From NCBI GenBank assembly GCA_038087875.1, contig JAXLNO010002386.1, forward strand, positions 372,001-436,000: DNA of 64,000 bases, given 5' to 3'. Below are positions 1 through 45,200 of this stretch, in pieces; position 1 is the first letter of the stretch; every line of letters begins with the position of its first letter. Below the pieces are notes generated by a model. That model was not told the DNA's origin. It saw only the letters and a program-made list of their open reading frames with translations, and did no database searches. Both the position numbers and the translations under genes were made by a program. The stretch is from Malacoraja senta (taxonomy: Eukaryota).

Positions 1-32
1 TTAATCCTTTTGTACAGCATAGACATTTCAAA

Positions 33-1564
33 ATGGAAACTTTCCCTACTGCTAAACAGCTGATTTTCAAAGGGTTATATGGCAAGCATAGATCTTAAAG
101 ATGCATATTACTCAGTGTCTGTTCATTGCGATAATAGGAGATATTTGAAGTTTAGCTGGATGAGTCAATTATGGCAATTCAAAGCACTGCCTAATGGATT
201 AACCTCAGCTCCTAGATTGTTTACCAAATTGTTAAAACCAGTTCTGGGGCTACTTCGAGCTCGGGGTCATATCGTAATGGCCTATTTGGACGATATCCTA
301 ATTGTAGGAAAAACTCGGGACGCAGCTGAATCATCCGTTTCCGTTGTTATACTCACTTTTGAGAAATTGGGGTTCATCATTCATCCAGTTAAATCCAAAT
401 TAACACCAGTCAAAGTTATTCATTACTTGGGCTTCACTATTAACTCAGATCACATGTTGGTGATGGCCCAGGGATAAAAGGCTGCAGTTAATTGAAGGTG
501 GTATCAAGCTCATTGCTGAACAACGACCTTCAATCAGACAGGTGGTGAGCTTGATTGGTAAATTAGTGGCTGCTTTACCAGCTGTGCAGTTTGGACCTCT
601 GCATTATCAACAATTACAATGAGCAAAAGAACAGGCACTGAGGACACATTCAGGTCAATTTGATAGGTCCATGGAATTACCAGCTGAAGCCATTGCTGAA
701 ATACAATGGTGGATCATGAATGTCTCAAGTAGTTCCAGGAAAATTTTGGTTGAACCACCTTCCATAGTTTTACAGACTGATGTTAGTGCTCTAGGTTGGG
801 ATGCTACTGATACTTTTTCCAGCTGTGGAGGCAGATGGAATAGGGAAGAGGCATCCCTTCTGCAATTACGAGGGATCAATTATTTAGAGCTATTGGGAAC
901 GTTTTATGGGCTTAAAGCTTATTGCCCTACCAAGAGTCATTTGCATGTGCAGGTTCAAATTGACAACAGTACAGCAGTGGCGTATGTTAATCATATGGGT
1001 GGAGTCAGGTCGGAATCTTGTGATAGATTGGCTAATCAGATCTGGAGCTGGTGTATTCCCAAAGACATTTGGCTTTCAGCAATCTACTTACCAGGTAGAT
1101 TCAACATAGTGGCAGATACTAGGTTACACCAATTCAATGACAACACAGAATGGATGTTGAGTCATGACATAGTTAAAGATGTTGCTGCTCGGTTTGGGAT
1201 GCCAAATATCGATTTGTTTGCATCCAGACTAAACCACCAGTTGCCTAAATGTGTTTCATTGGAACCAGTTCCTGGGGCAACAGCAGTAGATGCATTCTCG
1301 CTGCATTGGGGTGGAACGTTTTTATATGCATTTCCTCCATTCTGCCTCATCAGTCGGTGTCTGCAAAAAATCAAGCAGGTCTCCGCCTCACGAGTATCGG
1401 TGGTACCCGACTGGCCTACTCAGCCATGGTTCCCTCTTGTTTTACAGATGACTACAGAGCCTCATATGATTGTTCCCAAACATAGAAACCTACTGGTGCA
1501 CCCGGTAACTGGCGATCAACATCCTTTACATGATCATATTGATCTATTAATTTGCAGATTCTAA
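33..1564 (+). pseudogene. DIRS copy 1 RT-RNase H-methyltransferase-like ORF, frameshifted
   Basis: ORF 79-477 has IDLKDAY, ALPNGL and YLDD. ORF 671-1564 has RNase H (LQTDVSALGW, NYLEL, QIDNSTA) and a DLFASRLN...DAFSLHW...YAFPPF MT-like block. The frame breaks at about 475-670. Confidence 0.9.
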
Positions 1565-4160
1565 GAAGGCCATACCTGGGGAGAGGACTATCCGATCGCA
1601 CCGTGGATGTTATCACTGCGGCCTGGAGGGATAGTACCCAAAAGCAGTACATCTCTTTGATAAAAAAAGTGGGAGGTGTTCTGCTTACGGCAGAATATTT
1701 CATATCAAACTGCAGGCATCCCAGACGTGCTGGAATTCTTGTCAATGCTCTATTTCGATCACAAGTTAAGCTATATGTACCAAAATATATTTTTTCTAAA
1801 CTGAACGCTAATATTACTAATTTTGTTTGGGATTATAAATCACATAGAATTAAAAAAGAACACTTATGTAAACCAAAAGATGTCGGGGACTTTCACTCCC
1901 AAATCTTTTGTATTACTATTGGGCAATACATATTAAGAATATAATTTACTGGTTGGATAGTTAACTCAACAGACAGAATGGATAAAAATGGAGAAAGAGG
2001 ATTGTTATCCTTGTAATATAGGAACAATCCTCTTCTCCCCGAAAAAAATGAACAATACAATATACAAGAAAAACCCAATTATACAAGATACAATAAGAAT
2101 ATGGAAACAAATAAAATTATCCTTAAAATTAAGAAACCTATCATTGTTAATACCGATAGCGAATAATCCTTTATTTAAACCATCTATGATGGATAAAATA
2201 TATAATCAATGGGAAAGTTTAGGAATTAAAAGGGTCGGGGACATGTATGAAATGGGAGATTTATTATCATTTCAACAATTACAATTAAAATTTAAACTGA
2301 AAAACACTCATTATTTTAAATATTTTCAGATTTGTAATTTTTTGAAGACATACATACAGGGATATCAAAAAATAACTCCTGATTTACTAGAAGAAGTAAT
2401 GAATATAAAAGCTGATACACAAAAAATAATATCATATTTATATAATAGTATCTTAAATATAGATTTACCTGTGACCGAGGTAATTAGAGAAGAGTGGGAA
2501 CGGGAATTATTGATAAAAATTACGAAGGCTACATGGGAAAAGTATTTGACATACATTCACAAGTGTTCGATTAACGCAAGACATAATCTAATCCAATTTA
2601 AAATTTTACATAGATTATATTACTCAAAAACAAGATTAAATAAATTTTATCCAAATATATCGCCCATTTGCGATAAATGTTTAACTCAAGACGCAACTAT
2701 AACACACTCTTTTGTTTCTTGTATAAAACCTCATGGATTTTGGAGTGATATTTTCGAAATATTTACAAAACTATTTAAGACAAAAATGGAACCCAATAAT
2801 GAATTGATTATATTTGGGGTAATGGAAGACGGGAACAAATTGAGCTCATCTCAAAAGTCAATTTTTAATTATGGTTTAATAATAGCAAAATAATTAATAT
2901 TGAAATTTTGGAAAAATACACCAATACCAACGCTCAAAATGTGGATTGCAAGTATGTTGGATACCGCACATCTTGAGGAAATGCGATTCCTCCTAATAGA
3001 TAAATTTGACCAATTCATAACGAGTTGGTCTCCATTTGTCGTCTTTTTGGAAACATATGGTGCAAAACAGGTGTAAAAGCTAATCCGTGACTGCGGATGG
3101 TCAAGATTATAAATGATCTCCTATTTTCTTTTCTTCTCTTCTTTTATTCTCTTTCTTCTATTTTCTATGTCTCAACTTTCTTTTTTCATTCTTTATTTTT
3201 CTTTTTCACACACTATATATCTCACATTTTTCTATTTTTCATTATCTAACTTTTTTCTTTTTCTTCTTTATTACAAAAAAAATTTTAAATAAGAAGCTGT
3301 ACATAAAAGGTATTATGAAAATATGATTGTATACAATTGTACTTACTTCTAATAAAATTAAAATATTAAAAAAAAAAAAAAAAGTTAAGCTATAGTGCGA
3401 TCAATAGAGCCAGAAGTGCTCTGTCTTCATACTTATCCATGGGATCAGAACTATATTCTGTGGGGACACACCCTCTAGTTTCTAGATTTATGAAAGGAAT
3501 TTTTAATTCCAATCCTCCCAGGACCAGGTATTCGGTAATCTGGAATGTAAGCAAAGTTCTTATGCTCCTTCGTCAGTGGACTCCTGTCACAGCCCTGTCT
3601 TTGGCCAATGTCACCATGAAGGTAGTCATGGTTATGGTGTTGGTTTCAGCCCAATGTGTGCAGACATTACAGAAGCTGCGACTAGACAGGATGGAAGTGT
3701 CAGCAGATACCGTCATTTTTTACATCTATAATTTGCTCAAGCAGAGTAGACTAGGGGCAACAGGGTGTAAGATTACTTTTTCGGCATACCCTACAGATTC
3801 CCGCCTGTGTGTGGTGTCATGTTTGTTATATTACATCGAGGCTACCAGAACCCTAAGAGGTGCGGAATCAGCATTGTTTATTAGCCACAAAAAAACACAT
3901 AGAAAGGTGTCAGCTCAGACTATTTCAAGGTGGCTAAAGCAGGTTCTGCTTTATGCTGGGATTGACACCGACAATTTTAAATCTCATTCCATCAGGGCGG
4001 CATCAACTTCAGCGGCCAGGGTAATGGACGTCCCTATAGACCATATTCTCACGGCCGCAGGATGGTCCAGTGAATTGATGTTCCAAAAGTTTTATCATAA
4101 ACCAATTGCCAAACTGGGGGTATTTGCCCATTCTGTTTTGAGTTCAGTTTTATGGTTTCC
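1565..4160 (+). pseudogene. DIRS copy 1 tyrosine recombinase, split by the L1 insertion
   Basis: Removing 1776-3394 rejoins ...LYFDHKLSYSAINRARSALSSY... in frame. The C-terminal part has SHSIRAAS, AAGWSS and FQKFY. The first catalytic Arg is changed to Cys (AQCVQT at 3655-3657, versus AQRVQT in copy 2). Confidence 0.9.
1776..3381 (+). mobile_element. 5'-truncated L1-clade LINE, copy A (ORF2 C-terminus, 3' UTR, poly-A)
   Basis: Contains the ORF2 C-terminal CDKC...HSFVSC zinc knuckle, AATAAA and poly-A at 3368-3381. A 13-bp TSD aagttaagctata lies at 1763-1775 and 3382-3394. There is a premature TAA at 2891-2893 where copy B has AAA. Confidence 0.95.
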
Positions 4161-5235
4161 CCCCGGGATAGAAGGGGTTGCTATTGTTTCTTTACAAAAT
4201 AAACCGTTAATGCGTTTAAAGCAATGTTATGGTTTGATGCATTATTGATTATTTACTCATTCTGAGTCAATCGATGCAGTGAGACGCCTGGATTTGAATC
4301 TGCGGCATGAAATCACAGAGCTTTGAAATCTTCACATAATCACTCACGTGACTCCGAAGTAAAATAGTAAGATTAAAAGAGAACTTACCAGTTTGAAGTT
4401 TGATCTTTATTTTATGAGGAGTTACGATGAGGGATTACGTGCCCTCCACTCCCAACCCTCATAAAGGTCATCTGGTAGTTCTAGTCTTCTCTAATCTTAC
4501 TATTATACTTCAATTACTATTACCTGTGATTTCACACCGCTGCTTTGAAGATTGACGCACATGCGGCTGGACGGGGTCTTCTTCACGTAATCCCTCGTCG
4601 TAACTCCTCATAAAATAAAGATCAAACTTTAAACTGGTAAGTTCTCATTTAATCTTACTATTACTCCTTAGGATGGTGACATCCAATTTCCAACAGTTCT
4701 CTATTTGAAGAACTTCTTCCTCCCATTCCCTCTTGGAATATTTGGTGTTATTATTCAGCAGAGATTCATGAACAAGTAGAAGCAATCATGTCTACAGTAT
4801 CAATCCCAATGGTGAGTTATACTCCTCCATTGGGCCCTGCATTCCCCTTTCATCTGCGCTGTCAGTTAAAGTCTGGAGCTAAGATAAGGAGCATGTCAGT
4901 GATATTAAAACTAAATGTTTTGTTGTTTTGCCAGAAATGCAAAATGAAAAGAGAAAAGGCTGTAAACTTTGTGCAAGATAGAACTGCAGATGATGGTTTA
5001 CACTGAAGATAGAAGATGTTGGAGTAACTCAGTGGGTCAGGTAGCATCTCTGGGCATTCCTTCTCTCCAGAAATGCTGCCTGACCTGCTGAGTTATTCCA
5101 ACATTTTGGGTCTAGGCTGAAAACTTAGTTCAGCCAGAGAAAAAACTGATTGGGAAAGAGGCGAGTTGCAGTGATCTTACAATTGAAGGCTTTTGTTCAC
5201 GTCTTCACTGATTCTGACGCTTCTTACACTTGCAG

Positions 5236-5508
5236 AAACCCCTGAGGTGTTTATTGGGATTAAACGTGATGGGTCACAATCACTGAGACTCTCCTGCCTT
5301 GTCACAGGCTTCTAGCCACGGGCCATCGATGTAACGTGGCTGAGAGATGGTGAGGGGGTCCACGAGTCTGAATCCAGTGATCTGTTGCCCAATTGGGATG
5401 GGACTTACCAGCTGAAGAATACAATTCAACTGAGTAGAGAAGATGTGGCAAAATTCTCCTATTACATCGAACATGCAACTCTGCTGCAGGGAGTCAATGT
5501 TCCACAGG
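5236..5508 (+). pseudogene. MHC class I-type alpha3 (Ig C1-set) exon with an in-frame stop
   Basis: 273-bp phase 1-1 exon bounded by ttgcag and g|gtaagt. It translates TPEVFIGIKRDGSQSLRLSCLVTGF*PRAIDVTWLRDGEGVHESESSDLLPNWDGTYQLKNTIQLSREDVAKFSYYIEHATLLQGVNVPQ. TAG at 5313-5315 replaces the Y of GFYP, and TAT at 5460-5462 stands at the second Ig cysteine position. Confidence 0.88.
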
Positions 5509-5602
5509 GTAAGTGGCAAGTCACTGAGTCTGATCACTTGAGACAATAAACCTCCTGGACTGAGATAACAGCCTCAACTCACACTCTTAACTAAACTGTG
5601 GC

Positions 5603-6262
5603 TTTAGATTTTAGACTTTAGAGATATGGTGCAGATACAGGCCCCACAGCTCACTGAGTCCTTGCCGAACAGTGATCATCCTGTACATTTACACTAACCA
5701 ACACACTGGGGACAATTTACAATTTTACCTAAGCCAAGTAACCTTCAAGCCTGTATGCCTTTGGAGTGTGGGAGGAAACCGGAGCACCCGGAGAAAACCC
5801 ACGCAGTCACAGGGAGAACATACAATGTCCTTGCAGACAGCACCTGTAGTCTGGATCAAACCCAGGTCTCTGGTGCAGTAAGGCAGCAGCTCTACCGCTA
5901 CGCCACTGTGCCACCCATTATTAATTTGTGGTTATCTAATTGCCCAGAATTATTGATAGTCAATGGAATGTGGTTTTAGTTTAAGAGATACAGCGCAGAA
6001 ACCGGCCCTTTGGCCCACGAGTCTGCGTCAACCAGCGATCCCTGCACACTTACATTATCTTACTTATTAGGGGACAATTTACAATTATACCAAGCCAATT
6101 AACCTACAAACCTGTATGTCTTTGGACTGAGGGAGGAAACCGGAGATCCAGGCAAAACCCACGCAGGTCCCGGGGAGAAGGTACAAAACTCTGTACAGAC
6201 GGGACCCGTAGTCAGAATTGAACCGGGTCTCTGGCGCTGTAAGGCAGCAGTTCCACCGAGTG
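5603..6262 (-). mobile_element. Two adjacent tRNA-derived V-domain SINEs (HE1-like)
   Basis: Each has a tRNA-like head, the V-SINE core (ggtgctccggtttcctcccacactccaaag on the minus strand) and a short-repeat tail. Copies are at about 5603-5916 and 5974-6262. Confidence 0.85.
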
Positions 6263-6274
6263 GGCAAAGCAGAG

Positions 6275-7055
6275 CCAAATGGAATACAGTGTAGCAAGTG
6301 TCTGGTTTTACATTTTGGCAGTCGGAATAAAGACAGACTATTTACTAAATGGGGAGAGAATTCAGAGATCTGAGCTGCAAAGTGGGAGTACTAGTGCAGG
6401 ATTCCCAAATAGTTAATTTGCAGATTGAGTCGGTGGTAAGTAAGGCAAATGCAATGCCAGCATTCATTTCCGGGGGCCTAGGATATAAAAACAATGATAT
6501 AATGCTGAGGATTTATCGGGCACTGGTGAGGATACATTTGGAATATTGTGAGCAGTTTTGGGCTCGATATTAGAAGGGATGTGCTGGCTTTGGAGAGGGT
6601 CCAGAGGAAGTATGTCTTGGGGATGATTGATTTAACGTATGAGGAATGTTTGAAGTCTCTGGGCTTCTACTCGTGGGAATTTAGAAGGATGAGGGGGTAA
6701 ATCTCTGAAACCTACCAGTTAATGAAAGTCCCAGTTAGTGGATGTGGATAGGATGTTTTCAGTAATGGGAGAGTCTAGCACAGCCTCACAATAAAAATAC
6801 GTACTTTTAAAATGGAGATGAGGAGGAATTTCCTTTGTCACAGGGTGGCGAATCTGTAGAATTCATTAATACAGACAGCTGTGTGGGTCAAGTCATTGCA
6901 TATTTTAAAGCAGAGAATGATAGGTTCTTGAGTAGTATGGGTGCCAAAAGTTACAGGGAGAAGGCTGGAGAATGGGATTCAGAGGTAAAAATAGATCTGC
7001 CATGACTGAATGGTGGCGTAGACTCAATGGACTGAAAGGCCTACTTCTGCTCCAA
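6275..7055 (+). mobile_element. CR1 LINE 3' fragment
   Basis: Degenerate CR1 ORF2 C-terminal motifs (LVRIHLEYCEQFW, YEE.LK.LG.YS) and a CR1 3' UTR. Confidence 0.85.
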
Positions 7056-7364
7056 TGGTAAAAATTATTCTTATGTCACCCTTAACTCACACATCCAAAT
7101 GTAGGAAGCAAGATAGGCTGATCCTGGCCAAGGTCTCTTATCTTATTTCTTGGGCATCTAGCTAATTTTCTGATAGTAGTTAGTTGCACAAAAGGCCAAT
7201 AGTGGTGCCACATCCAACCCCATTATCAGGCTGAAGTAGCAGCACCTGTTCTGTAGCTGACTTATTTGTTCCAGACAAGACCTCTGCAAATATCTTCACA
7301 CCAGGGCCAAGATGACATGGTTAAAATTGCTGGTCAGTACAAATAGACAGTAGTGTTAATGTCT

Positions 7365-7500
7365 GAGTGTGCCTGTGTGTGCCTGTGTGCCTGTGCCTGT
7401 GCGTGTGCGTGTGCGTGTGTGTGTGTGTGCTCATGTGTGTGAGACAGAGAGAGGGGGAGGGGGGGAGGGAGGGAGAGAAAGAGAGTGTGTGTGTGAGAAT
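7365..7500. repeat. Compound GT/GC/GA microsatellite
   Basis: (gtgt)n, (gcgt)n and (ga)n/(ggga)n runs. Confidence 0.9.
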
Positions 7501-7644
7501 ATCAAACTCTCAGATATTGAAATATCAGCAAAGTTTAAAACCTTTGAAGTTTTATCAACTATAAATGGGTTCACTTTTATTTGCTAAAATAACAATGGTC
7601 AACATAAGAAAATAGCGGTGTTGACTTCTACACTGCAAATAGAC

Positions 7645-8505
7645 CACCAGGGGGCGCTGACCTGTGTGCGGCTGCCCAGCCAGCAGCTGTCTGTCCTTTC
7701 ACCTTTATTTTTTATTTTAGTCAGTAAAGTGTTTTGTTTTGGAGGTCTAGACTTTTGTGTGTGGGGGGGGGAGGGGGAAACAACCTTTCACGGTCCCTAC
7801 CTGGCCGGAGAGGCAGCTTTACTCCGGGCTGCAGCTTCGACCCGTCCTCGCGGCCTACCAGCGGTCCTGGAGCAGCGTTTCCTGTCGGGGACCGCCCAGA
7901 GCCTCGGCTTCGGCGGTGGCACAGCACTGGAGCGCTATCGCGGAGCGGGCGATGCCTTGCCCGGGTCGCCGCGCTGGAGCTCCGGTGAGGTGAGGATCGC
8001 TGGAGAAAAGATCGCGGAGCTGCGGGACTGTGGAGCGACCAGCTGCGGGCTACGGCGCTGAACTTTACACCGGGAGCCTGGGATCTCTAGATGAGATCGC
8101 CAGTTGTGGAGCTCCAACCGGTGCGGCCTTGTTGGCTTTGGAAGCCGCGGCCTCCAGTGCGGAAGCGGCCGTTCCAGGGTTCCGAGGCCGCTGGGAGGAC
8201 TCTCCCGACGCCGGAGCAACATCACCCGGCGAGAACGGCCTGGAACATCGGGCCTCCGTAGAGGCAACTGTGGAGGCCTCAATGGGCCCGACTATGGGTG
8301 AACTGGGGTTGGGGACTGGACTTTGTGCCTTCCCTCATGGTGGGACCCATTGTGGGGGGATGTTCAGTGTTAAGACTATCTTGGTTTTGTGTCTGTATTC
8401 TCTCTCTTTTTTGTGTGCTGCATCATGGCAAAAAGCATTTCACTTCACTACACCCGGGTGTATGTGAATGTGACTAATAAAATATCTTGAATCTTGAATC
8501 TTTAT
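7645..8505 (+). mobile_element. CpG-rich non-autonomous retroposon with a LINE-type 3' tail
   Basis: GC/CpG-rich body ending ...atgtgactaataaaatatcttgaatcttgaatctt, a tail of the same type as the Rex-Babar-like 3' ends in this window. Its ORFs show no recognisable domain. Confidence 0.5.
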
Positions 8506-8752
8506 TTCTGATATATGCTTGATTCTTTAAATTCATAATTAAATGCTGCAGATAAAATCTCAACGCTAATATGAACTTCAAAGATTTTTCATTGATCTAT
8601 TTAAACATCCATCGTCTGGACAATTACATAAATCTAAGACTTTGTTACTTTTTATTTAGATGTGAACAATGCTAGTTTAATGTAGATAATAAAATCATTT
8701 CAAAGTCGTTATTGATCAATAAATGTTTAAAATGCACTATATATGCCAACAG

Positions 8753-8979
8753 AGATGGCAGCGAAAGAAGATATAAAGATTAGGATCGTGACTGGAGCTG
8801 TAATCGTTCCTCTCATTCTCCTGGGGATCATCCTTGGAATTGGTTGCTGGAAGAAGAGGAAAAAGATAAAACCTTTCAATGAACAGGGACCAGCTGACAA
8901 CAGCAGAGACCAGGAGACGACTGCAGTGACCATGAAGCACAATCAACTTCCATTGGGATGCAGAGGTCTACCGGAATGA
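8753..8979 (+). CDS. Candidate connecting-peptide/transmembrane/cytoplasmic exon of the class I-like gene
   Basis: Acceptor ccaacag ends at 8752. Phase-1 joining to the alpha3 exon gives ...VPQ-E-MAAKEDIKIR-IVTGAVIVPLILLGIILGIGCW-KKRKK..., a 22-residue hydrophobic stretch followed by a basic stop-transfer cluster. The 3' boundary is uncertain. Confidence 0.7.
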
Positions 8980-9440
8980 TGCGTGGATTAGTGGGGTATT
9001 AGCCACAGGGAGAAGTTGGACAGACTGGACAGTTGGATTGTTTTCTCTGGCATGTCGGGGATTGAGGGGAGACCTGACAGTAATATATCAAACTGGGAGG
9101 AGTAGAGATAGGGTAGACCATCAGACTTTTTACCCAGGAAGGAAATATCAAATAAGAGCAGGTATAGCTTTACAATGAGTGGCAAAGTTTAAAAAAGATG
9201 TGCAGGACAAGTGTTTTACGCCAAGGGTGGCAAGTGACTGGAATGTGCTGCCGGGGGTGGTGGTGGAAGCAGATATGATAGTGGCATTTAAGAGACTTTT
9301 AGATAGGCACATGTATATGCAGGGAATGGATGGATATGGATTATGTGCAAGCAGATAACAATTGGTCTTGGCATCATGTTCGGCACAAACATTGTGGGTC
9401 AAAGGGACTGTTATTGGGCTGTACTGTTCTATGTTCTATG
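8950..9440 (+). mobile_element. CR1 LINE 3' fragment, degenerate
   Basis: Similar to the other CR1 3' ends here (ttggacagactgg...ttgttttctctgg...gagggggagacctga; tail ctgtactgttctatgttctatg). Confidence 0.75.
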
Positions 9441-9704
9441 CTCTTTATTGTATCAATGCTGACTGATGGCTTTACATTCAGCCATTAATTTTTCAAGTGC
9501 TGTCTTCACTGCAGTTACCCTGTGATTCCAAAGTCATACATTGCGCCACATTTTGGAATTAAAGGTCGCCCATTTGATTGATTGATACTTTATTACCATA
9601 TGTGTCATGTCACAGTGAAATTCTTTGTTTTGCATGACATACAAAGAGTCACCATATATAGGGTGTCGACGCAGTTACAAAGTAATCATTACAGTTCCCA
9701 ATGG

Positions 9705-9890
9705 TCCCTCTTTGTTCTCGGCAGCCCCTCCATGTTGGGTTCACCTGTGTTATCAACGGCCCCCCAACCCCGGGACCATCTTTGTTCTCGGCAGCCACTC
9801 CATGTTGGGTTCACCTGTATTATCAGCCCCCCCCCCCCCCCCCCCACCCCGAGACCCTCTTTGTTCTCGGCAGTCCTCCCTTGCCAGGTT
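9705..9890. repeat. Imperfect tandem repeat, about 2.5 units of about 70 bp
   Basis: ctttgttctcggcag occurs three times; the first two copies are followed by ctccatgttgggttcacctgt. Confidence 0.85.
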
Positions 9891-12062
9891 CTTCTTTAAA
9901 ATAGCTACGAAGAAGATTTATTTTCCAGGAGGTGTATGATTTGCCTGAACATTCTATTCCAGCTGTGAAGATAAGGTGAATTAATATTTTCCAGGTTGAG
10001 ATATAGAGAGTTTTAGATCAGAAATGAATCAAAGATTGCAGAAATAATGCAGTAAACTGATCGAAATCAGATTGGACATTATGTTATTGAATGATGCAGT
10101 CTGTTCAAGGGGGCTTACAGCTGATTATTAATCTTATTTTATATAAAACATAAAAATGTTCATCTCAGGAAGAGGCCCTTTGGCCCACAATGTCTGTGGT
10201 GAACATGATGAGATGCTAAACTGATCCCATCCAACTGCAACATGATCCATATCCCTCTATTTCCTGCAGATCAGTTTGTCAATCTAAAAGCCTCTCAAAC
10301 ATCATATACATATCTTGCCAAAGATAGACACAAAAAGCTGGAGAAACTCACCGGATCAGACAGCATCTCTGGATACAAGACATAGGTGACATTTCGGGAT
10401 GAGACCCTTGTTCAGACTCCAGAAATGCTGTTTGACCCGCTGTGTTACTCCAGCTTTTTGAGCCTATCTTCGGTTTAAACCTGCATCTGCAGTTCGTTCC
10501 TAGTTATTTTGCCACTTCTCTTTGTCACATACTGTAACCTGCATTCCTTGTTCACATACCTGATGGTGTAGTGGAGAAGTAATTGCCTTTGCATTTAATG
10601 CTTCACTCAGTGCTTCAAGTATTTGATGGGCCAGTCAACAAGGATCTTTGTTTTCAATACGAACCACGCTCTACACCACAGCTTACATAATATTGCTTAG
10701 TTTAGTTGAGTTATAGAGCATGGATGCAGAGCCTTCAGCTCATCGAGTTGATACCAACCATCCTGCACACCAGTTCTATGTTATCCCTCTTTCACATCCG
10801 CTTTCCATACACTAGAGCAATTTTACAAAGGCCAACTCACCTACAAACCTGTACATCATTGAGATGTGCGAGGAAACCGGAGCACCGGGAGAAATCCCAC
10901 GTGGTCACAGGGAGAACATGCAAACTCCACACAGACAACATCCCAGTACCATGTCCAGTGAATATTTATGGAACATGGTAACGTATGGGGGCTGTGTTTT
11001 GTTGACCTGACAGAGCACTGGGAACAATACTCATTATCAAAGCTGTGGTGTAATAGCTGTGGAAGTGTTTTATGTGCAACAGACCGAGAATGTCATTGTA
11101 TATCCACCAGTGTCATTTCTGAATTATGAGCATTTAATAAAATACTTTTGAATGAGTTTTACCAAGACGTTAGCATGCTACACTGAGCTATATACTTGTT
11201 TTGTCATTGTTAATACTACAGACAGCTATTTACTCAATCATAAGTTCATAAGATCATAAGTGATAGGAACAGAATTAGGCCATTCGTCCCATCTACTTAG
11301 CTGTAAGTAGACACACTCTCTACAATACCTTTCTCACACGACCGAACTTTGAAGATCAGTTCTCACATGGTATGTTTGAGAGCTATTTCCATTTACTGGG
11401 AGACATCACAGCCTAGCCTGAACTAGACTGCATGCTACTCTATAGTTAATGGCGAGATCAAGGCTTTTTGTCTGTCAGTCTGATATTGATTACAGTTGAA
11501 TTCAGGAAACCCAATACCAAGCACAGCCTTTCACGAGGAAAAGCAAACAAATTGTGGCATTTACTTCAAGAAATACTCACTCTCCCTATTGGACAATGTT
11601 AATGAATTCTGTTTCAAACAATGAGTTCAAACCATGCTAAACAAGTCCAAAACATTCTTAATGTAAACAAAGGAACTGCAGATGCTGGTTTAAGCCGAAG
11701 ATAGACACAAAATGTTATAGTAACTCACAGGCACAGGCAGCATCTCTGGATAGAAGGAATGGGTGATGTTTTCGGTTGAGATCCATTGGGGGGAAAAATC
11801 CTCCTGGCCTATGTGTAAATCGCATGTCAATGAGAATGGAGATGTTGACTGTGAAATGGGAGTCAGTGGGATTTGGATGGAAATGTGAACTTATAAAATT
11901 TAAAAGTAGTCTATTGGATCTGAACACATCTTGGTCTGAAGTAGGGTCTCGACCCACAAAGTCACCCATTCCTTCTCTCTAGAGATGCTGCCTGTGAGTT
12001 ACTCCAGCATTTTGTGTCTGTCTTCCATGTAAACTGGCATCTGCAGTTCCTTCCAGTACATT

Positions 12063-17914: not shown

Positions 17915-20900
17915 GAGTCATAGAGTGATACAGTTTGGGAACAGGCCCTTCGGTCCAACTTGTCCACACCGGCCAACATGTCCCAGCTACACTAGTCCCA
18001 CCTGCCTGCCTTTGGTCCATATCCCTCCAAACCTGTCATATTAATGTACCTGTCTGTTTCTTTTTTTTTAATATTTTTATTTTATTAGAAGTAAGTACAA
18101 TTGTATACAATCATATTTTCATAATACCTTTTATGTACAGCTTCTTATTTAAAAAAAATTTGAAATAAAGAAGAAAAAGAAAAAAGTTAGATAATGAAAA
18201 ATAGAAAAATGTGAGATATATAGTGTGTGAAAAAGAAAAATAAAGAATGAAAAAAGAAAGTTGAGACATAGAAAATAGAAGAAAGAGAATAAAAGAAGAG
18301 AAGAGAAGAAAAGAAAATAAGGAGATCATTTATAATCTTGACCATCCGCAGTCACGGATTAGCTTTTACACCTGTTTTGCACCATATGTTTCCAAAAAGA
18401 CGACAAATGGAGACCAACTCGTTATGAATTGGTCAAATTTATCTATTAGGAGGAATCGCATTTCCTCAAGATGTGCGGTATCCAACATACTTGCAATCCA
18501 CATTTTGAGCGTTGGTATTGGTGTATTTTTCCAAAATTTCAATATTAATTTTTTTGCTATTATTAAACCATAATTAAAAATTGACTTTTCAGATGAGCTC
18601 AATTTGTTCCCGTCTTCCATTACCCCAAATATAATCAATTCATTATTGGGTTCCATTTTTGTCTTAAATAATTTTGTAAATATTTCGAAAATATCACTCC
18701 AAAATCCATGAATTTTTATACAAGAAACAAAAGAGTGTGTTATAGTTGCGTCTTGGGTTAAACATTTATCGCAAATGGGCGATATATTTGGATAAAATTT
18801 ATTTAATCTTGTTTTTGAGTAATATAATCTATGTAACATTTTAAATTGGATTAGGTTATGTCTTGCGTTAATCGAACACTTGTGAATGTATGTCAAATAC
18901 TTTTCCCATGTAGCCTTCGTAATTTTTATCAATAATTCCCGTTCCCACTCTTCTCTAATTACCTCGGTCACAGGTAAATCTATATTTAAGATACTATTAT
19001 ATAAATATGATATTAATTTTTGTGTATCAGCTTTTATATTCATTACTTCTTCTAGTAAATCAGGAGTTATTTTTTGATATCCCTGTATGTATGTCTTCAA
19101 AAAATTACAAATCTGAAAATATTTAAAATAATGAATGTTTTTCAGTTTAAATTTTAATTGTAATTGTTGAAATGATAATAAATCTCCCATTTCATACATA
19201 TCCCCGATCCTTTTAATTCCTAAACTTTCCCATTGATTATATATTTTATCCATCATAGATGGTTTAAATAAAGGATTATTCGCTATCGGTGTTAACAATG
19301 ATAGGTTTCTTAATTTTAAGGATAATTTTATTTGTTTCCATATTCCTATTGTATCTTGTATAATTGGGTTTTTCTTATATATTGTATTGTTCATTTTTTT
19401 CGGGGAGAAGAGGATTGTTCCTATATTACAAGGATAACAATCCTCTTTCTCCATTTTTATCCATTCTGTCTGTTGAGTTGAACTATCCAACCAGTAAATT
19501 ATATTCTTAATATGTATTGCCCAATAGTAATACAAAAAATTAGGGAGTGAAAGTCCCCCGACATCTTTTGGTTTACATAAGTGTTCTTTTTTAATTCTAT
19601 GTGATTTGTAATCCCAAACAAAATTAGTAATATTAGCGTTCAGTTTAGAAAAAAAATATTTTGGTACATATACTGGTATAGATTGAAATAGGTATAATAA
19701 CTGTGGTAGGAAGCTCATTTTAATAGCATTTATTCTGCCTATTAATGATAAAGGGAGTGTTTTCCAAAATTTTATCATTATATTAAGTTTATTTATTAAG
19801 GGTATAAAATTGGCATTGAATAAAGCTTTATGTTTTCTAGTAATCTGTATACCCAAATATTTGAATTTTTCTGTTGCTATTTTAAAGGGGAATTTCAATA
19901 AGTGTGTGGATTCTTGAGGTTTTAACGTCATAATTTCACTTTTGTTCCAGTTTATTCTATATCCAGAAAAGGACCCAAATTCCTCTATTAAATTTAATAA
20001 ATTTGGTATGCTCGTTTGTGAATTTGTTATATATAACAAAATATCGTCTGCATACAATGAAATTTTATTATTTGAGTCCCTAGTATTATAACCCTGAATA
20101 TTCGGATGGCTTCTTATACTTTCAGCCAGAGGTTCTATCATAAGGGCAAATAGCAGGGGTGATAAAGCACATCCCTGCCTATTACCCCTTGATAATTGAA
20201 TTTTTTGAGATAACATGCTGTTAGTTAAGTCTAACTGTTTCTTAAACGAGGGGATAGTCCCAGCCTCAATTACCTCCTCTGGGAGCTTGTTCCATACACC
20301 CACCACACTTTGTGTGAAAAAGTCGCACTTCGGATTCCTATTAAATCTTTTCCCATTGACCTTGAAACTGTGTCATCTGGTCCTCGATTCCCCTACTCTG
20401 GGCAAAAGACTCTGTGCATCTACCCGAACTATTCCTCTCATGGTTTTGTATACCTCTTACAAGATCACCCCTCATCCTCCTGCGCTCCAAGGAATAGAGA
20501 CCCAGTCTACTCAACCTCTCCCTATAACTCACACCCTCTAGTCCTGGCAACATCCTTGTAAATATTTTCTGACCAGTTTCAAGCTTGACAATATATTTCC
20601 TATAACATGGTGCCCAGAACTGAACACAAAATTCTAAATGCGGTCTCACCAACGTCTTATACGACTGCAACATGACCTCCCAACTTCTGTACTCATTATT
20701 CTGACTGATGAAGGACAATGTGCCAAAAGCCTTTTTGACCACCTTATCTACCTGTGACTCGACCTTTAAGGAACCTTGCACTTGTACTCCTAGATCCCTC
20801 TCCTCGCAACACTCCGCAGAGACCGACCATTTACTGTGTTAGACATCCCAAAAAGCAACACCTCACACTTCTCTGTACTAAATTCCATCAACCATTCCTC

Positions 20901-35585: not shown

Positions 35586-35658
35586 ATGCGTGAGGTTGTG
35601 CGTGAAATGATGCTGTTCATCTTGTTGAGTTTCTTCCGCGTACAAGGGGCTGAAGCAG
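35586..35658 (+). CDS. Candidate signal-peptide (leader) exon, phase 1, GC donor
   Basis: MREVVREMMLFILLSFFRVQGAEA+G has a hydrophobic core and an A-E-A cleavage motif, and ends CAG|GCAAGT. An alternative start lies at 35607. No downstream exon was identified. Confidence 0.55.
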
Positions 35659-35929
35659 GCAAGTTAATGATTTTCATTGTATTCGCTACTGGCTAAAAGC
35701 GTCTTGGCTTTATCTCAATCTTGACCGGAGGCGACTGAGTTTAAACAAGCGCGCAATACACATTCAGTCTGGTTCATGGTTCACGTTAAAAGGGTTTAAT
35801 CTCCACTGTTTCAGTACAATCCAGACTGGAATTTCTGCATTGATTTGCACAATGCCCCGTTTCCTCTGTGGAAGAAGGAACTACAGATATTGCTTTAAAC
35901 TGATTTTAACTCGTGTAAAACAAACAGGA

Positions 35930-39254: not shown

Positions 39255-42200
39255 GAATAGAATAGAATAGAATAGAAACTTTATTTGCCACACGACCAGG
39301 GTTGGTGGTAATTGGGTTCGGTACATGATGGTACACTGCTTTAGCACATTAACACTAACAACAATAATAATAAAGCACATCACAAATCACAAATCTCACC
39401 AACAATACATAGTGCAAAAGAACAGACAAAAACCATAGACAAGACACTGTATACATCAAAGTCAAAAAGTTATTGGAGGGAATTAAGTGTTCTTATTGCT
39501 GAGGGGAAGAAACTGTTTTTAAAACGGGTAGATTTTGTAGCAAGTGACCTAAGGCGCCTCCCTGAAGGGAGAGACTGGAAAAGGTGGTTTGCTGGATGGG
39601 AGGGGTCCGAGATGATCTTTGTTGCCCGTTTTGAGGTACGTTGGAGGTAAATGGAATGGATTGAGGGGAGGGGAGAGTTGATGATCCTAGAGGCCTTGGA
39701 GACAATGCGCTGTATTCTGTGTAGTGAATGACTGTCAGTGTTTCCGTACCAGACTGTGGTTGAGGAGGTGATGATGCTTTCAATGATGGATTGATAGCAG
39801 CGTACCAGGAGGTGTTTGTGGACTCTGAACTTCTTGAGCTGTCTGAGGAAGTATAGGCGTTGTTGTCCTTTCTTAATGATGTGGTCAGCATTGATGTGCC
39901 ATTTTAGATTATTGCAGATATAGGTGCCCAGAAACTTAAATAAGTTCGTGGAGGTTATGGGATGGGAGTTGACATGGACCGGGGGTTTGAGGTTTTGTTT
40001 GCGTCTGAAATCTATGATGGTTTCTAAGGTTTTTGAGGTGTTAAGCTGGAGGTTGTTGTCTGCGCACCATTTGACTGCGCTGTCCACTGTTTGATGGTAT
40101 TGTGATTCATTGTTGTCTGAGATGAGGCCAATTATTGTTGTGTCGTCTGCATATTTGAAAATTTTAACTGAGCTGCATTGGGATGTGAGGTTGTTGGTGT
40201 AAAGTGAGAAGAGCTGAGGTGACAGAACGCACCCTTGAGGGGCTCCTGTATTGATAGTCTGGAGAGTTGGAGAGTTTTTCACCCACCTTGACTCTTTGTT
40301 GTCTGTTTGTCGGAAAATGTAAAATCCAATGGCACATGGCTAGGTGAATGCCCATGTCCAACAGTTTATTGTAGATTTTACTTCAGAGTCACGTGAGTGA
40401 CTACGTGAAGAAGCCCGTCAGTGCGCCTGCGCGTCATTACGTCAGACGCCTTGACGCAAACGGACGTGAGGAGCAGTGCTCCTCGAGTGGTTTGTAGTTT
40501 TTCAACTACAAGGTAAGTAAAAACTTTTTTACAGGTTTGCCAGGTCCGTTTACTGTGGGTCTATGGCGATTTTTTCCACAGACGCCATGGGAAAAAACGG
40601 ACAGGGGGAAGAGGCGAGCGACATAGCCGACAGAAGTCGGGAAAGTCGGGAGTCCGCGGTTAGAGACCAACCGCCTCTAAACCCCGGTACAGTCGCCAGC
40701 GGTGAGCATAGCGACTGTGGACCTGGGGCTGGTGAAAACACAGTCAGTGCCTGTCGGGCAAAAGACAAAGTTTAAATCCCAACGGAGGGAGTCCCAGGCA
40801 ATGAAGAAGCTCCAGGGCTAGATACTGCTTTAGAGCGTATTGCCCAAATAGAAAGCCTTTTACACAGGCTGTTGGAGCAACGTTCACTCAGTGAGGAGTG
40901 TTCTGAAAGCCAAGCTGCTGGAAACAGCTCAAACAGCTCCTGGTACAGGGCTAGATACTGCTTTCGAGCGTATTGCCCAAATAGAAGCCTTTTTCATAGG
41001 TTGTTGGAGCAAAAGTTCACTCAGGAAGGATTGTACTGTAATCCAAGCTGCAGGAGCAGCTTAACAGCACCTGGCTCAGGGCTGATGGAATGCACCCTCA
41101 GGAATGAGGAGCGTGCTACGGGTCATGAGATTTCAGACCCCGACTCTGACGGTGAGGCTGTACAAGGCGATGAAAGGCAGCTGCCAGATGTTCCAACCCT
41201 GGTAGTAGGATTCGCTGCCCCGTCAGGGTCAGGAGAGCAATTAGGAAGAACTGGCCTCCTTAATAAATTACTTGGTTTACCATTAGCTGGAACAGCATGA
41301 AATGGATGAGACTGCAAGAGTATCTGGAATCAGTTGCAGAGAATATTAAAGCTGCTGGGTTCTGGAATAACTGCTTTTACCAGAATAGCAGGTAACAACC
41401 AAAAGATGACGAAGTTGCATCAGCAAGCACTGGGGTTGCTATGCAGCACCCACTTCGAGAAGTGCTATACGGTCTACTATGAATCCGAAATTCGCAGCAC
41501 TCTGCAAACCAAGTAATATACAAATTACCCAACTTACTCTTTGGAGAGATCTTGGGAGACGTATTAAAGAGTTGGAAGATGAAGCGAAAACAGGATTGAT
41601 GAAGACATCAATGGTTGTGAAGTCTGTAAAGAGGAAGTATCCTTTCAGACGTCATACGGATCCTGGACCAAGTCGCTCATCAACGCAGGGACGTAGTTGG
41701 CGGCCTGCAGCGGGAGCAAGAACCAGTGGGCGTGCTTCCGGGAGAACCCAGGAATCTCAGGGTACTGAAATGACTCAAGAGGTAGGTGGACCTGGTTCTC
41801 ATGGGAACATACTAACTGGATTAAGTCCAAAAGTTGGAGGCAGGTTACATTTCTTCTATAATAATTGGAAGAAAATTATTTCAGATGTGGTAATCCTGAA
41901 TAATATACAAGGATTTCGAATTGAATTCAATCCAAATTATGATTTGCCTGTTCAGCATGTTCCTAGCCGAACTCTGCACTTTGTAGAAAAAGAAGTGATG
42001 GAGGTTCAGGTTGCAATTGAAACCCTATATAAAAAAAGGGGTTATTGAAAAATCAGTCTACCAAAGTCACCAATTTGTGTCAAAAATATTCCCTCGATCA
42101 AAAAAGGATGGAGGATGTAGGATTCTTGTAGATTTGATAAATCTGAATCCTTTTGTGCAATTTAGACATTTTAAAATGGAAACATTTGTGACTGCCAAAC

Positions 42201-45200
42201 AGCTTATTTCAGAAGCATGTTATATGGCAACTATAGACTTGAAAGATGCATATTATTCAGTGTCTGTTCATTCACAAGATAGGAAGTATCTTAAATTTAA
42301 ATGGATGAACCAGTTGTGGCAGTTCAAAGCTCTGCCTAATGGGTTAATATCTGCACTCAGAATATTCACAAAAATTGTTAAACCAATTCTGGGCTTGCTG
42401 AGTAGCCAGGGGCATGTACTAATGGCATATTTGGATGATGTCTTGATTATAGGAAAGACAAAACAGTCAACAGAAGTATCTGTTGCAGTTGTGAAATCAA
42501 CTTTTGAAAAGTTGGGGTTTCTAATTCATCCACAGAAATCTAGGTTAACACCATGTACCTCTATTAATTATTTGGGGTTCACAATTGATTCAGTCCAAAT
42601 GAATATCACTTTGCCCAGGGAAAAGGGTGGATTTGATTAAAGATTGCAGTAATCTCCTAAACGAGCAAAAACCTTCAATTAGACAGGTGGCTCGTGTACT
42701 GGGAAAATTAGTAGCAGCATTCCCAGCAGTCCAATTTGGACCATTACATTATCAACAACTGCAGAGACTTAAAGAACAGGCACCGAGAATGCATGTTGGT
42801 CATTTTGATAGAACCATGCAACTAACAACAAATGCTGTTTCTGGTCTGCAGTGGTGGATTCTACATGTCTCAAGCAGTTCCAGCAAAGTGCTGATTGAAC
42901 AACCTTCCATGATATTACAAACTGATGCCAGTGCACCAGGATGGGGTGCAACTGACTTAACGTCTAGCTGAGGAGGCAGATGGAATCAGGAAGAGTCATT
43001 GTTACTGCAGACATGGGGAATTAACTATTTGGAGCTTCTAGGATGTTTCTATGGGCTCCAAGCTTATTGTTCTAACACAACTAATAAGCATGTTCAAGTT
43101 CAAATTGATAACACGACAGTAGTTGTTTATATTAATGATATGGAATTAAGTCGGTGTCTTGTGACAAAATGGTTAATCAACTTTGGGCTTGGTGTATTGA
43201 AAAGAACATTTGGATTTCAGCTATCTATCTACCAGGTAGAATGAACGATAGCAGACACCAAGTCACGAAAAGTTACATTATAATAAAGAATGGATGTTGA
43301 ATCAAGAGGTGTTCAATGATATAGTCATCAGATTTGGAATGACCGACATCGACTTGAATCATCAGCTATCGAGATATGTCTCATGGAAACCAGATCCAGG
43401 AGCAGTGGCGATTGATGCTTTCTCGCTACATTGGGGTGGTATGTTTCCATATATATTTCCACCTTTCTGCCTCATAAGCCAATGTTTGCTTAAAATCAGG
43501 CAAGATGCTGCTTCAAGGGTATTGGTAGTACCAGATTGGCCTACACAGCCATGGTATCCGTTGATATTAGAATTAACAACACAAATGTTGATGAAGTCCC
43601 AAAAAAGAGTAATTTATTGCTGCTCCCTGTACAGGGGAACAACATCCATTATATGATCGTTTGGATTTGTTGATTTGCAGGTTTTAAGAATGCCTTTTCT
43701 GGGACGAGGACTGTCTGAGCATACTGTGGACATGCTTACGGCAGCCTGGAGGAAGAGCACTCAAAAACAGTACCTTTCTTATATTAAGAAATGGGAAAAG
43801 TTCTGGGTACAAAAGAATGTGCAATAAAGTACTGCAGATATTTCAAATGTTTAGAATTTCTGTCAAAACTTTATTATGATGAAGGTCTGAGTTGTAGTGT
43901 AATTAATTCAGCCAGAAGTGCATTGTCCTCATATTTGGTTCTGGATTCAGAAAGAATCTCAATTGGGTCACACCCAATTGTTTCCAGACTAATGAAAGGA
44001 ATCTTTAATTCCAAACCACCGAAACCTAGGTGCGTGACAATCTGGGATGTAAGTGTGGTACTGAAACTACTTTGTGATGGTTATCAAGTGTGTCTTTACC
44101 TTTGGTCAAGCTCAGTATGAAAGTATTCATGTTTATGGCATGAGTGACAGCACAACGAGTGCAAACACTTGGAAAATTACAAATAGATAGTATGGAAGTA
44201 ACTGAAGACAAGGTTACATTCTATATCTATGACCTAATAAAGCAAATTAGGCCAGGTGTGACAGGATTTAAAATTATGCTGGCAGCATATCCAAATGATC
44301 CATGTCTTTGTATTAAGACATATTTATTACAATACATTGAGGTCACAAAGAATTTGAGAATACGGAAACTGGGTTTTTGATCACACACAAGAAACCACAC
44401 AAGAGAGTTTCAATACAGACTATTTCCAGATGGATAAAAGAAGTCTTAACAGCTGCTGGTATTAACACTTATGTTTTTACGTCTCACTCGACTAGGGCAG
44501 CAGAAATGTCGGCGGCCAGGGCAAAAGATGGCCCCGTCGACCATATCCTCGCAGCCGCAGGGTGGTCCAATGAGTTGATGTTTCAACATTTTTACCATCG
44601 GCCTATTGTTAATGCGGGGTTGTTTGCAGAAACTATTTTAAGTTCTGTGTAAATTCCTCTGGTTTAAAGGGGATCTGATTCATTTCATTCTTGAAATGAA
44701 TTACTGCATTTGTGGTACAAATGTTATTATGAATGCATGATTGATTATTCTCGTTCCGAGTCAATCTATGCAGTGAGAAGCCGGGATTGATCCACGGCAT
44801 GAAATCACAAAGCTTTAAAATCTTCACGTAGTCACTCACGTGACTCCGAAGTAAAATAGTAAGATTAAACGAGAACTTACCTAAATTTGAAGTTTGATCT
44901 TTATTTTATGAGGAGTTACGCAGGTGATTACGTGCCCGCCACGACCCTACCCTCTATCATAAAGGTCAGATGGAAGTTCTTGTATTACTCGTTTTAGTAT
45001 GAGACTATATTACTTCGGTTCTTGTTTTTTGTGATTTCACACCGCTGCTTTGAAGATTGACGCGCAGGCGCACTGACGGGCTTCTTCACGTAATCACCTA
45101 CGTAACTCCTCATAAAATAAAGATCAAACTTCAAACTTAGGTAAGTTCTCGTTTAATCTTACTAGTTTAATTGGGTGTATAGTATTAAAGGCCGAGCTAA

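What the first reader, a model, noticed from the sequence alone, without database searches (positions are those of the whole stretch)
5236..8979. Disabled MHC class I-like gene hidden among the repeats (alpha3 plus TM exons)
The ORF track misses this exon because of an internal stop. Seen: a 273-bp phase 1-1 exon with canonical splice sites encodes an Ig C1 domain with class I-type motifs (LSCLVTGF*P, VTWLRDG, LPNWDGTYQL). It has two lesions, each a single substitution from the expected codon: TAG for Tyr and TAT for the second Cys. About 3.2 kb downstream an exon joins in frame and encodes a TM helix and a basic cytoplasmic start. Established: this matches the class I heavy-chain exon organisation, and cartilaginous fish carry classical and several non-classical class I lineages. 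Inference: this is a pseudogene (or null allele) of a divergent non-classical lineage, with alpha1/alpha2 upstream of the window. The DIRS insertion just upstream may be linked to its loss.
Basis: partly seen in the sequence, partly recalled or inferred. Interest (0 to 1): 0.72.

Follow-up and report, generated by a model that had tools for sequence, protein, structure and literature searches.

The report
Broken skate MHC class I-like gene tail
The window holds the last two exons of a skate copy of an old shark-and-ray MHC class I-like gene, the sister of the lipid-binding-type gene UGA; this copy is disabled by a stop codon and a lost structural cysteine, which is an ordinary fate in this gene family.

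Summary
Window 5236-5508 (+) is a 273-bp phase 1-1 exon with AG/GTAAGT splice sites. It encodes a C1-set Ig domain whose best matches are all class I-family alpha-3 domains. It carries TAG (5313-5315) where every relative has Tyr, and TAT (5460-5462) where every relative has the second Ig cysteine. Exon 8753-8979 joins in frame. It encodes the connecting peptide, the TM helix and the whole tail, and ends at the same stop codon as its closest relative.

The gene is not an unknown lineage. It is 86% identical to the little skate protein P0004. On a tree it falls inside a conserved, mostly one-per-species shark-and-ray clade (NCBI name "MR1-like"). That clade is sister to UGA, the crystallised shark non-classical class I (PDB 9CH4). 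It lies upstream of a UGA copy on the same strand, as in little skate and sawfish.

A decayed DIRS-like retroelement fills the intron up to 576 bp before the alpha-3 exon and runs off the window start. Whether alpha-1 and alpha-2 exist upstream could not be seen.

Earlier notes from this scan report several intact and broken copies of this lineage on other pieces of the same genome. Verdict: real but ordinary.

The parts
1..4660 (+). DIRS-like retroelement, cut by the window start. It is decayed and carries a nested LINE fragment at about 1772-3324. It fills the 5' part of the intron before alpha-3.
   Evidence: RVT_1 E = 1.4e-19 (79-474). Phage_integrase-type tyrosine recombinase E = 8.6e-6 (3439-4245; 26.1 bits, just under Pfam's gathering cut-off of 27.1). 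zf-RVT in the nested ORF 1988-2890. The RT ORFs lie in different frames. A second copy at 42146-45164 (70-71% identity) lacks the nested insert and fixes the 3' end near 4660. A 79-bp inverted repeat lies at 4363-4441 / 4584-4662.
4661..5235 (+). Native remnant of the intron between alpha-2 and alpha-3.
   Evidence: Homology to L002 starts at window 4658 and to L001 at 4712. Identity to L001 is 90.5%.
5236..5508 (+). Alpha-3 (C1-set Ig) exon, 273 bp, phase 1-1, with canonical splice sites.
   Evidence: Identity to the L001 exon is 94.1% at nucleotide level and 86% at protein level. The exon boundaries are the same in sawfish L007.
5313..5315 (+). In-frame TAG replacing the conserved Tyr of the F-Y-P motif. 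It lies 193 nt before the last exon junction.
   Evidence: TAC in L001 and L002. Tyr in all 13 lineage members.
5460..5462 (+). TAT (Tyr) replacing the second cysteine of the Ig-domain disulfide.
   Evidence: TGT in L001 and L002. This Cys is invariant in 32 class I proteins.
5509..8752 (+). Intron of 3.2 kb, rich in repeats.
   Evidence: Colinear with the L001 intron at 87-92% over 5509-6794 and 8504-8752. SINE-like repeats and a GT-rich microsatellite lie between.
8753..8979 (+). Last coding exon: connecting peptide, TM helix, basic stop-transfer stretch and full cytoplasmic tail, ending in TGA. The reading frame is open.
   Evidence: There is one 3-bp indel against L001 and the stop codon is shared. 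In sawfish P0151 the TM and tail also map as one block.
8980..11292 (+). 3' flank colinear with the little skate copy.
   Evidence: 89.5-91.8% identity to L001 22178-24699.
35586..35658 (+). Context only: leader exon of the next gene, a UGA copy, with a GC donor. The rest of that gene lies beyond the window end.
   Evidence: Its translation matches the N-termini of UGA proteins P0252 and P0250. Window 27.9-62.9 kb is colinear at about 90% with the 5' flank and intron 1 of UGA genes in L003, L004 and L006.

Best explanation
This is the 3' half (alpha-3 exon plus the single TM/tail exon) of an unprocessed, non-functional copy of the 'UGA-sister' non-classical MHC class I lineage of sharks and rays, in a rajid skate. 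It sits in the ancestral position, upstream of a UGA gene copy on the same strand.

As assembled it cannot make a working heavy chain, for two reasons:
- The TAG in alpha-3 would end translation 193 nt before the last exon junction. By the 50-55-nt rule this makes any transcript a target of nonsense-mediated decay (inference from established knowledge).
- The Cys-to-Tyr change removes the intradomain disulfide of the Ig domain. In class I molecules this is the domain that contacts beta-2-microglobulin (general knowledge).

The copy has few other derived changes, and its splice sites and last exon are intact, so its death looks recent.

Shown here: the exons, the lesions, the lineage and the synteny. 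Inferred: fixation of the lesions, loss of expression, and the timing.
For: Exon anatomy and lesions.

Class I alpha-3 identity:
- Pfam C1-set.
- The top 60 PDB hits are all class I, MR1, CD1, ZAG or MIC; the best is 9ch4_A at 2e-13.

Closest proteins: P0004 and P0003 of Leucoraja erinacea at 84-86%.

Tree: the window row lies inside the sister clade (SH-aLRT 99), with the skate copies (100) and with batoids (98). This clade is separate from the UGA clade (100).

PDB 9CH4 is titled shark non-classical MHC class I, UGA.

Synteny: the order sister then UGA on the same strand is seen in the window, in little skate scaffold 384 and in sawfish.

Selection on the alpha-3 exon:
- Against L001 there are 12 non-synonymous and 4 synonymous codon differences, omega 0.86.
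- Against sawfish omega is 0.36-0.38.
- This fits relaxed constraint among the skate copies.

The window-derived residue changes are few and include both lesions. Another little skate copy (L002) is also dead: a stop in alpha-2 and a deleted alpha-3 donor. So decay of copies is usual in this family.
Against: - No reads could be laid, so the TAG and TAT rest on one assembly.
- The 5' exons were not seen.
- Omega near 1 rests on only 15 substitutions and partly reflects changes on the L001 branch.
- The last exon is fully open and the splice sites are perfect. That pattern would also fit a young null allele of a working gene.
- The species of the window is not established, so L001 may be an orthologue rather than a paralogue.
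Confidence: 0.72

Rival explanations
1. Null allele or assembly error. The locus is a working UGA-sister gene in the population, and the two substitutions belong to one haplotype or are consensus errors.
For: Splice sites are intact, the last exon is open, and there are very few derived changes. The terminal branch on the tree is short, 0.04.
Against: There are two independent disabling substitutions within 150 bp. Substitution errors of this kind are generally rare in polished long-read assemblies (general knowledge). A decayed DIRS element with a nested LINE sits 576 bp upstream in the intron. No close protein fragment with the intact version of this exact exon was found, although that search sees only short proteins.
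Confidence: 0.17
2. Orphan tail. Only the alpha-3 and TM exons were duplicated or retained, with no alpha-1/alpha-2 upstream, so it never was a complete gene at this site.
For: No alpha-1 or alpha-2 exon occurs anywhere in the window with 231 class I queries. All three copies compared have different sequence upstream of the point where homology begins. An earlier scan note (s1-140386, unchecked) reports tail-only copies elsewhere in this genome. No first-stage note reports alpha-1/alpha-2 in the roughly 10 kb before the window.
Against: Homology to L002 resumes within 3 bp of the DIRS 3' end, as expected for a simple insertion into an intron. The gap to the upstream UGA copy, about 10 kb by note s1-140274, is large enough for the missing exons: alpha-1 to alpha-3 spans 9 kb in L001.
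Confidence: 0.25
3. The domain is not a class I alpha-3 but a class II, Ig/TCR-constant, tapasin or beta-2-microglobulin-type C1 domain.
For: The 25-aa piece before the stop on its own gives only weak, non-significant VH framework-like hits.
Against: The top 60 PDB hits are all class I family. In one fusion chain the MR1 alpha-3 scores 27.3 bits and the beta-2-microglobulin part 9.4 bits. The exon is 86% identical to the alpha-3 of a protein that carries PF00129 alpha-1/alpha-2. The tree placement agrees.
Confidence: 0.01

Closest known systems
[quoted passage not shown] Examples are XP_055486430.1 of Leucoraja erinacea (P0004) and LOC127585976 of Pristis pectinata (P0151), the latter marked MHC-Ib in the supplement of PMC10751288.
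   Same: Alpha-3 is 86% and the TM/tail 85% identical to P0004. It has the same exon boundaries, the same single TM-plus-tail exon, the same stop codon, and the same position upstream of UGA on the same strand. It lies inside the clade on the tree.
   Different: It has a stop codon and a lost cysteine in alpha-3, and a DIRS element in the preceding intron. The 5' exons were not seen.
UGA, shark non-classical MHC class I (PDB 9CH4). The review PMC12562908 reports it, together with UFA, as CD1-like and lipid-binding (personal communication there).
   Same: It is the best solved-structure match (E = 2e-13 on 64 aa). Its lineage is the sister lineage on the tree (SH-aLRT 91) and the neighbouring gene.
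   Different: It is only 38-43% identical over whole proteins to the window's lineage. The window's tail has no tyrosine sorting motif of the YQNI type carried by skate UGA proteins. The UGA clade excludes the window row.
UFA, the second CD1-like elasmobranch MHC-Ib lineage named in PMC10751288 and PMC12562908.
   Same: [quoted passage not shown] That description also fits the sister lineage.
   Different: No UFA sequence or accession is available to the tools, so identity with the sister lineage is only a possibility.
Class I pseudogenes in other MHCs (birth-and-death evolution of class I genes).
   Same: It is a duplicated unit with intact splice sites and a few disabling point mutations, lying among transposons.
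   Different: The parent lineage is single-copy in most sharks and rays found here, rather than an expanded family.

Membership tests
MHC class I heavy-chain family | Membrane-proximal C1-set Ig domain most similar to class I alpha-3 domains | tested here: met
   Pfam C1-set E = 2.8e-6. The top 60 PDB hits are all class I family.
MHC class I heavy-chain family | Alpha-3 encoded by one phase 1-1 exon of about 273-276 bp, followed by a TM exon | tested here: met
   The boundaries are the same in L001 and in sawfish L007.
MHC class I heavy-chain family | Alpha-1/alpha-2 peptide-binding superdomain (PF00129) in the same gene | not testable with these tools
   None is found in the window.
MHC class I heavy-chain family | Open reading frame with the Ig disulfide pair | tested here: not met
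   TAG at 5313-5315 and Cys-to-Tyr at 5460-5462. It is therefore a pseudogene or null allele, not a working member.
UGA-sister lineage (P0004, P0151-P0161) | Falls inside the clade on a class I tree | tested here: met
   SH-aLRT 99 for the clade and 100 with the skate copies, on 68 rows.
UGA-sister lineage (P0004, P0151-P0161) | Lies upstream of a UGA gene on the same strand | tested here: met
   In the window the TM exon ends at 8979 and the UGA leader starts at 35586. The same order holds in little skate scaffold 384 and in sawfish.
UGA (PDB 9CH4 lineage) | Clusters with 9CH4-type proteins | tested here: not met
   Alpha-3 is 36-44% identical. The UGA clade (100) excludes the window row.
UGA (PDB 9CH4 lineage) | Cytoplasmic tyrosine motif (Y-Q-N/T-I) as in skate UGA proteins | tested here: not met
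   The window tail has no tyrosine. The UGA tails are shown.
UFA | Sequence identity to a named UFA reference | not testable with these tools
   The name occurs only in text. No sequence is held, and the supplement has no UFA label.
DIRS-type retroelement (the upstream insert) | Reverse transcriptase together with a tyrosine recombinase on one strand | tested here: met
   RVT_1 E = 1.4e-19. The Phage_integrase match has E = 8.6e-6 at 26.1 bits, just under Pfam's gathering cut-off of 27.1, so the recombinase call is weak. A second copy lies in the window.

The most novel reading that the evidence does not exclude
Rajid skates have turned the ancient sister-plus-UGA gene pair, which is one or few copies per species in the other sharks and rays found here, into a repeated array. 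The copies are born and die quickly, and this window catches one unit just after its death. If the sister lineage is the unpublished CD1-like 'UFA', skates would offer a natural series of intact and freshly broken copies for asking what these lipid-type presenters do.
Probability: 0.35. Interest if true: 0.4.

Novelty: new member of a known kind. Interest (0 to 1): 0.2.

Why it matters
On its own it matters little: it is one more dead class I copy. It helps as annotation. It shows that the exon pair belongs to the UGA-sister lineage. It shows that the sister-then-UGA gene order is shared by skates and sawfish. It also shows that skate assemblies hold several diverged units of this pair, some of them broken. 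That is relevant to anyone counting functional CD1-like (UFA/UGA-type) genes in cartilaginous fish.

Tried and rejected
- Short-protein search with the 64-aa piece, looking for fragments from other individuals: nothing.
- The 25-aa pre-stop piece alone: only non-significant antibody-framework hits.
- Search of earlier findings by sequence: blank, which means nothing.
- Fetching the window's own contig through annotated neighbours failed. Scaffolds 161, 384 and 412 of little skate, the thorny skate chromosome and the Rhinoraja chromosome are all only 82-93% identical to the window. The species was therefore not fixed and the upstream DNA not obtained.
- Naming the lineage from papers failed. 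PMC7002201 and PMC8454915 are not held. A text search for 9CH4 gave only unrelated papers.
- Rejected: haplotig or allele of L001, because about 10% intron divergence is too much.
- Rejected: membership of UGA (tree and tail).
- Rejected: class II, Ig or TCR origin.
Full report
**1. The observation**

- Exon 5236-5508 is 273 bp. It is preceded by ...cacttgcag and followed by gtaagt. It reads in phase 1-1 as a 90-codon Ig domain.
- Codon 26 is TAG (5313-5315). Codon 75 is TAT (5460-5462).
- Exon 8753-8979 follows ...gccaacag and joins as G|AG. It encodes a short connecting peptide, a hydrophobic helix, a basic stretch and a tail of about 40 residues ending in TGA.
- The window contains no N runs.

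**2. Is it more than chance, and what kind of domain is it?**

- The 64 residues after the stop hit Pfam C1-set at E = 2.8e-6.
- Against all PDB chains, the 60 best matches are all class I family: class I, MR1, CD1, ZAG and MIC. The best is 9ch4_A at E = 2e-13. In a beta-2-microglobulin-MR1 fusion chain, the MR1 alpha-3 scores 27.3 bits and the beta-2-microglobulin part 9.4 bits.
- Against 1.8 billion representative proteins, the two best full matches are 84-86% identical (P0003, P0004; E about 1e-26).
- tblastn of P0004 covers the whole exon across the stop (86%, E = 4e-46) and the second exon (85%, E = 7e-28).
- The 25 residues before the stop are uninformative on their own.
- Class II, Ig/TCR-constant, tapasin and beta-2-microglobulin readings are therefore excluded.

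**3. The lesions**

- Nucleotide alignment with two little skate copies shows TAC and TGT in both (L001 on scaffold JAMYXN010000384.1, L002 on JAMYXN010000412.1). The window's TAG and TAT are thus derived single substitutions.
- Tyr and Cys are kept in all 13 proteins of the lineage.
- Across 32 class I proteins of several lineages the Cys is invariant and the Tyr at least 90% conserved.
- The window row has few other derived residues: Q28R, E64Q, R92M and A107V. Most other differences from P0004 are changes on the P0004 side.

**4. The lineage**

- P0004 (XP_055486430.1, Leucoraja erinacea, 'MR1-like, partial') has relatives at 54-72% identity in sawfish, manta, stingray, sawshark, sevengill shark, catsharks, carpet sharks, hound shark and basking shark. 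In most of these species one full-length relative was found. Many carry the CD1-type Pfam domain PF16497.
- These proteins are only 38-43% identical to a second conserved lineage, P0038 and relatives.
- An AlphaFold model of P0004 (mean pLDDT 77) was aligned to PDB chains. The best match was 9ch4_A (Z 24.4, 40% identity), whose entry title is 'Crystal structure of shark nonclassical MHC CLASS I, UGA'.
- The 9ch4 fragment shown is 95% identical to zebra shark P0236. The second lineage is therefore UGA.
- On a 68-row tree (IQ-TREE quick search, SH-aLRT support only) the window's alpha-3 plus TM row falls inside the first lineage (99), with the skate copies (100) and with batoids (98). That lineage joins UGA at 91.
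- I use the label 'UGA-sister', which earlier notes of this scan also use. I tested the placement myself.
[quoted passage not shown] Whether the sister lineage is UFA cannot be tested, because no UFA sequence is available.

**5. Gene order**

- In the window, a leader exon at 35586-35658 translates to a sequence that matches the start of skate UGA proteins (MREVVREM...).
- Window 27.9-62.9 kb is colinear at about 90% with the 5' flank and first intron of UGA genes of little skate and thorny skate.
- The expected UGA alpha-1 exon would lie just past the window end. In L003 it follows the last colinear block by 1.8 kb.
- The layout is therefore: sister tail, then 26.6 kb, then the UGA leader, on the same strand.
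- The same order holds on little skate scaffold 384, where P0004 precedes P0253.
- It also holds in sawfish. P0151 sits at 13,956,125-13,977,896, which is exactly LOC127585976, marked MHC-Ib in the supplement of PMC10751288. The UGA-type P0241 follows from 14,020,337.

**6. The upstream element**

- ORFs at 79-474 (RVT_1, E = 1.4e-19) and 3439-4245 (Phage_integrase family, E = 8.6e-6, slightly under Pfam's gathering cut-off) lie on the gene's strand. Together they indicate a DIRS-like retroelement.
- The ORF at 1988-2890 (zf-RVT) belongs to a nested LINE fragment.
- A second DIRS copy at 42146-45164 lacks the nested piece and ends where window 4660 aligns. A 79-bp inverted repeat closes the element.
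- Homology to L002 begins at 4658 and to L001 at 4712. The native intron is therefore 4661-5235, and the element lies 576 bp before alpha-3.
- The element is old: it has frame breaks and a nested insert. It runs off the window start.
- None of the three copies shares sequence upstream of this point. An empty site could not be shown, and I found no evidence that the element caused the gene's loss.

**7. How this copy compares with its relatives**

- L001 is colinear with window 4712-11292 at 87-92% identity. The alpha-3 exon is 94.1% identical and the last exon about 91%.
- Alpha-3 differs from L001 at 12 non-synonymous and 4 synonymous codons. Nei-Gojobori omega is 0.86. Either copy against sawfish gives 0.36-0.38.
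- This fits long-term purifying selection followed by relaxed constraint among the skate copies, on small counts.
- L002 is dead in its own way: a stop at the conserved alpha-2 cysteine, a deleted alpha-3 donor, and no alpha-1 or TM exon found.

**8. Species, and paralogue against orthologue**

- None of the fetched loci is the window itself.
- Unique DNA of the window is about 90% identical to both little skate and thorny skate. Those two are about 95.6% identical to each other. The window is about 86% identical to Rhinoraja.
- Either the window comes from a third rajid species, so that L001 is an orthologue or co-orthologue, or it is an old duplicate unit within one of these species. I could not decide between these.
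- Earlier notes report both intact and broken sister-lineage copies on other pieces of this same genome. These are unchecked leads.

**9. Mechanism**

- As assembled, translation would stop in alpha-3, 193 nt before the last exon junction. By the 50-55-nt rule this should trigger nonsense-mediated decay (established knowledge; inference here).
- Even with read-through, the Ig domain would lack its disulfide.
- The most likely reading is a recently disabled, unprocessed pseudogene copy (0.72).
- Rivals are a null allele or assembly error (0.17), and, as a variant of the pseudogene reading, an orphan tail without 5' exons (0.25).

**10. Limits**

No read-level check of the TAG or of splicing was possible.

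**Verdict**

This is a real feature, correctly read as a disabled class I-type gene. It belongs to an already annotated lineage next to UGA, and this scan has noted other copies of that lineage before. Interest is low.

Noticed in passing
window 35586-35658 (+): Leader exon of a UGA gene copy; its translation matches the MREVVREM... start of skate UGA proteins. It has a GC rather than GT donor at 35659. The rest of that gene should start just beyond the window end. This is already the subject of note s1-141133.
   Followed up: partly
window 42146-45164 (+): Second DIRS-like element, 70-71% identical to the one at 1-4660 and without the nested LINE insert.
   Followed up: partly
window 1772-3324 and 18057-19881: Two copies of a LINE-like element with a zf-RVT ORF. 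One is nested inside the DIRS element. Related copies occur in the thorny skate locus L004 at about 83% identity.
   Followed up: no
L002:11716-14217 (Leucoraja erinacea JAMYXN010000412.1): The annotated protein XP model P0003 is built on a dead copy. There is a stop at the conserved alpha-2 cysteine and the alpha-3 splice donor is deleted. The model reads through intron sequence.
   Followed up: partly
L001:12980-13025 (Leucoraja erinacea JAMYXN010000384.1): The P0004 gene model carries 11 extra residues between alpha-2 and alpha-3 (AlphaFold pLDDT under 50 there), because it uses an odd AT-start intron. A GT donor 33 nt upstream would give the junction seen in relatives.
   Followed up: partly
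L003 versus L006 (little skate scaffolds 161 and 384) and L004 (thorny skate): The two little skate UGA units differ from each other by 1.3-4%, about as much as each differs from thorny skate. They are either recent paralogues or very old haplotypes.
   Followed up: no
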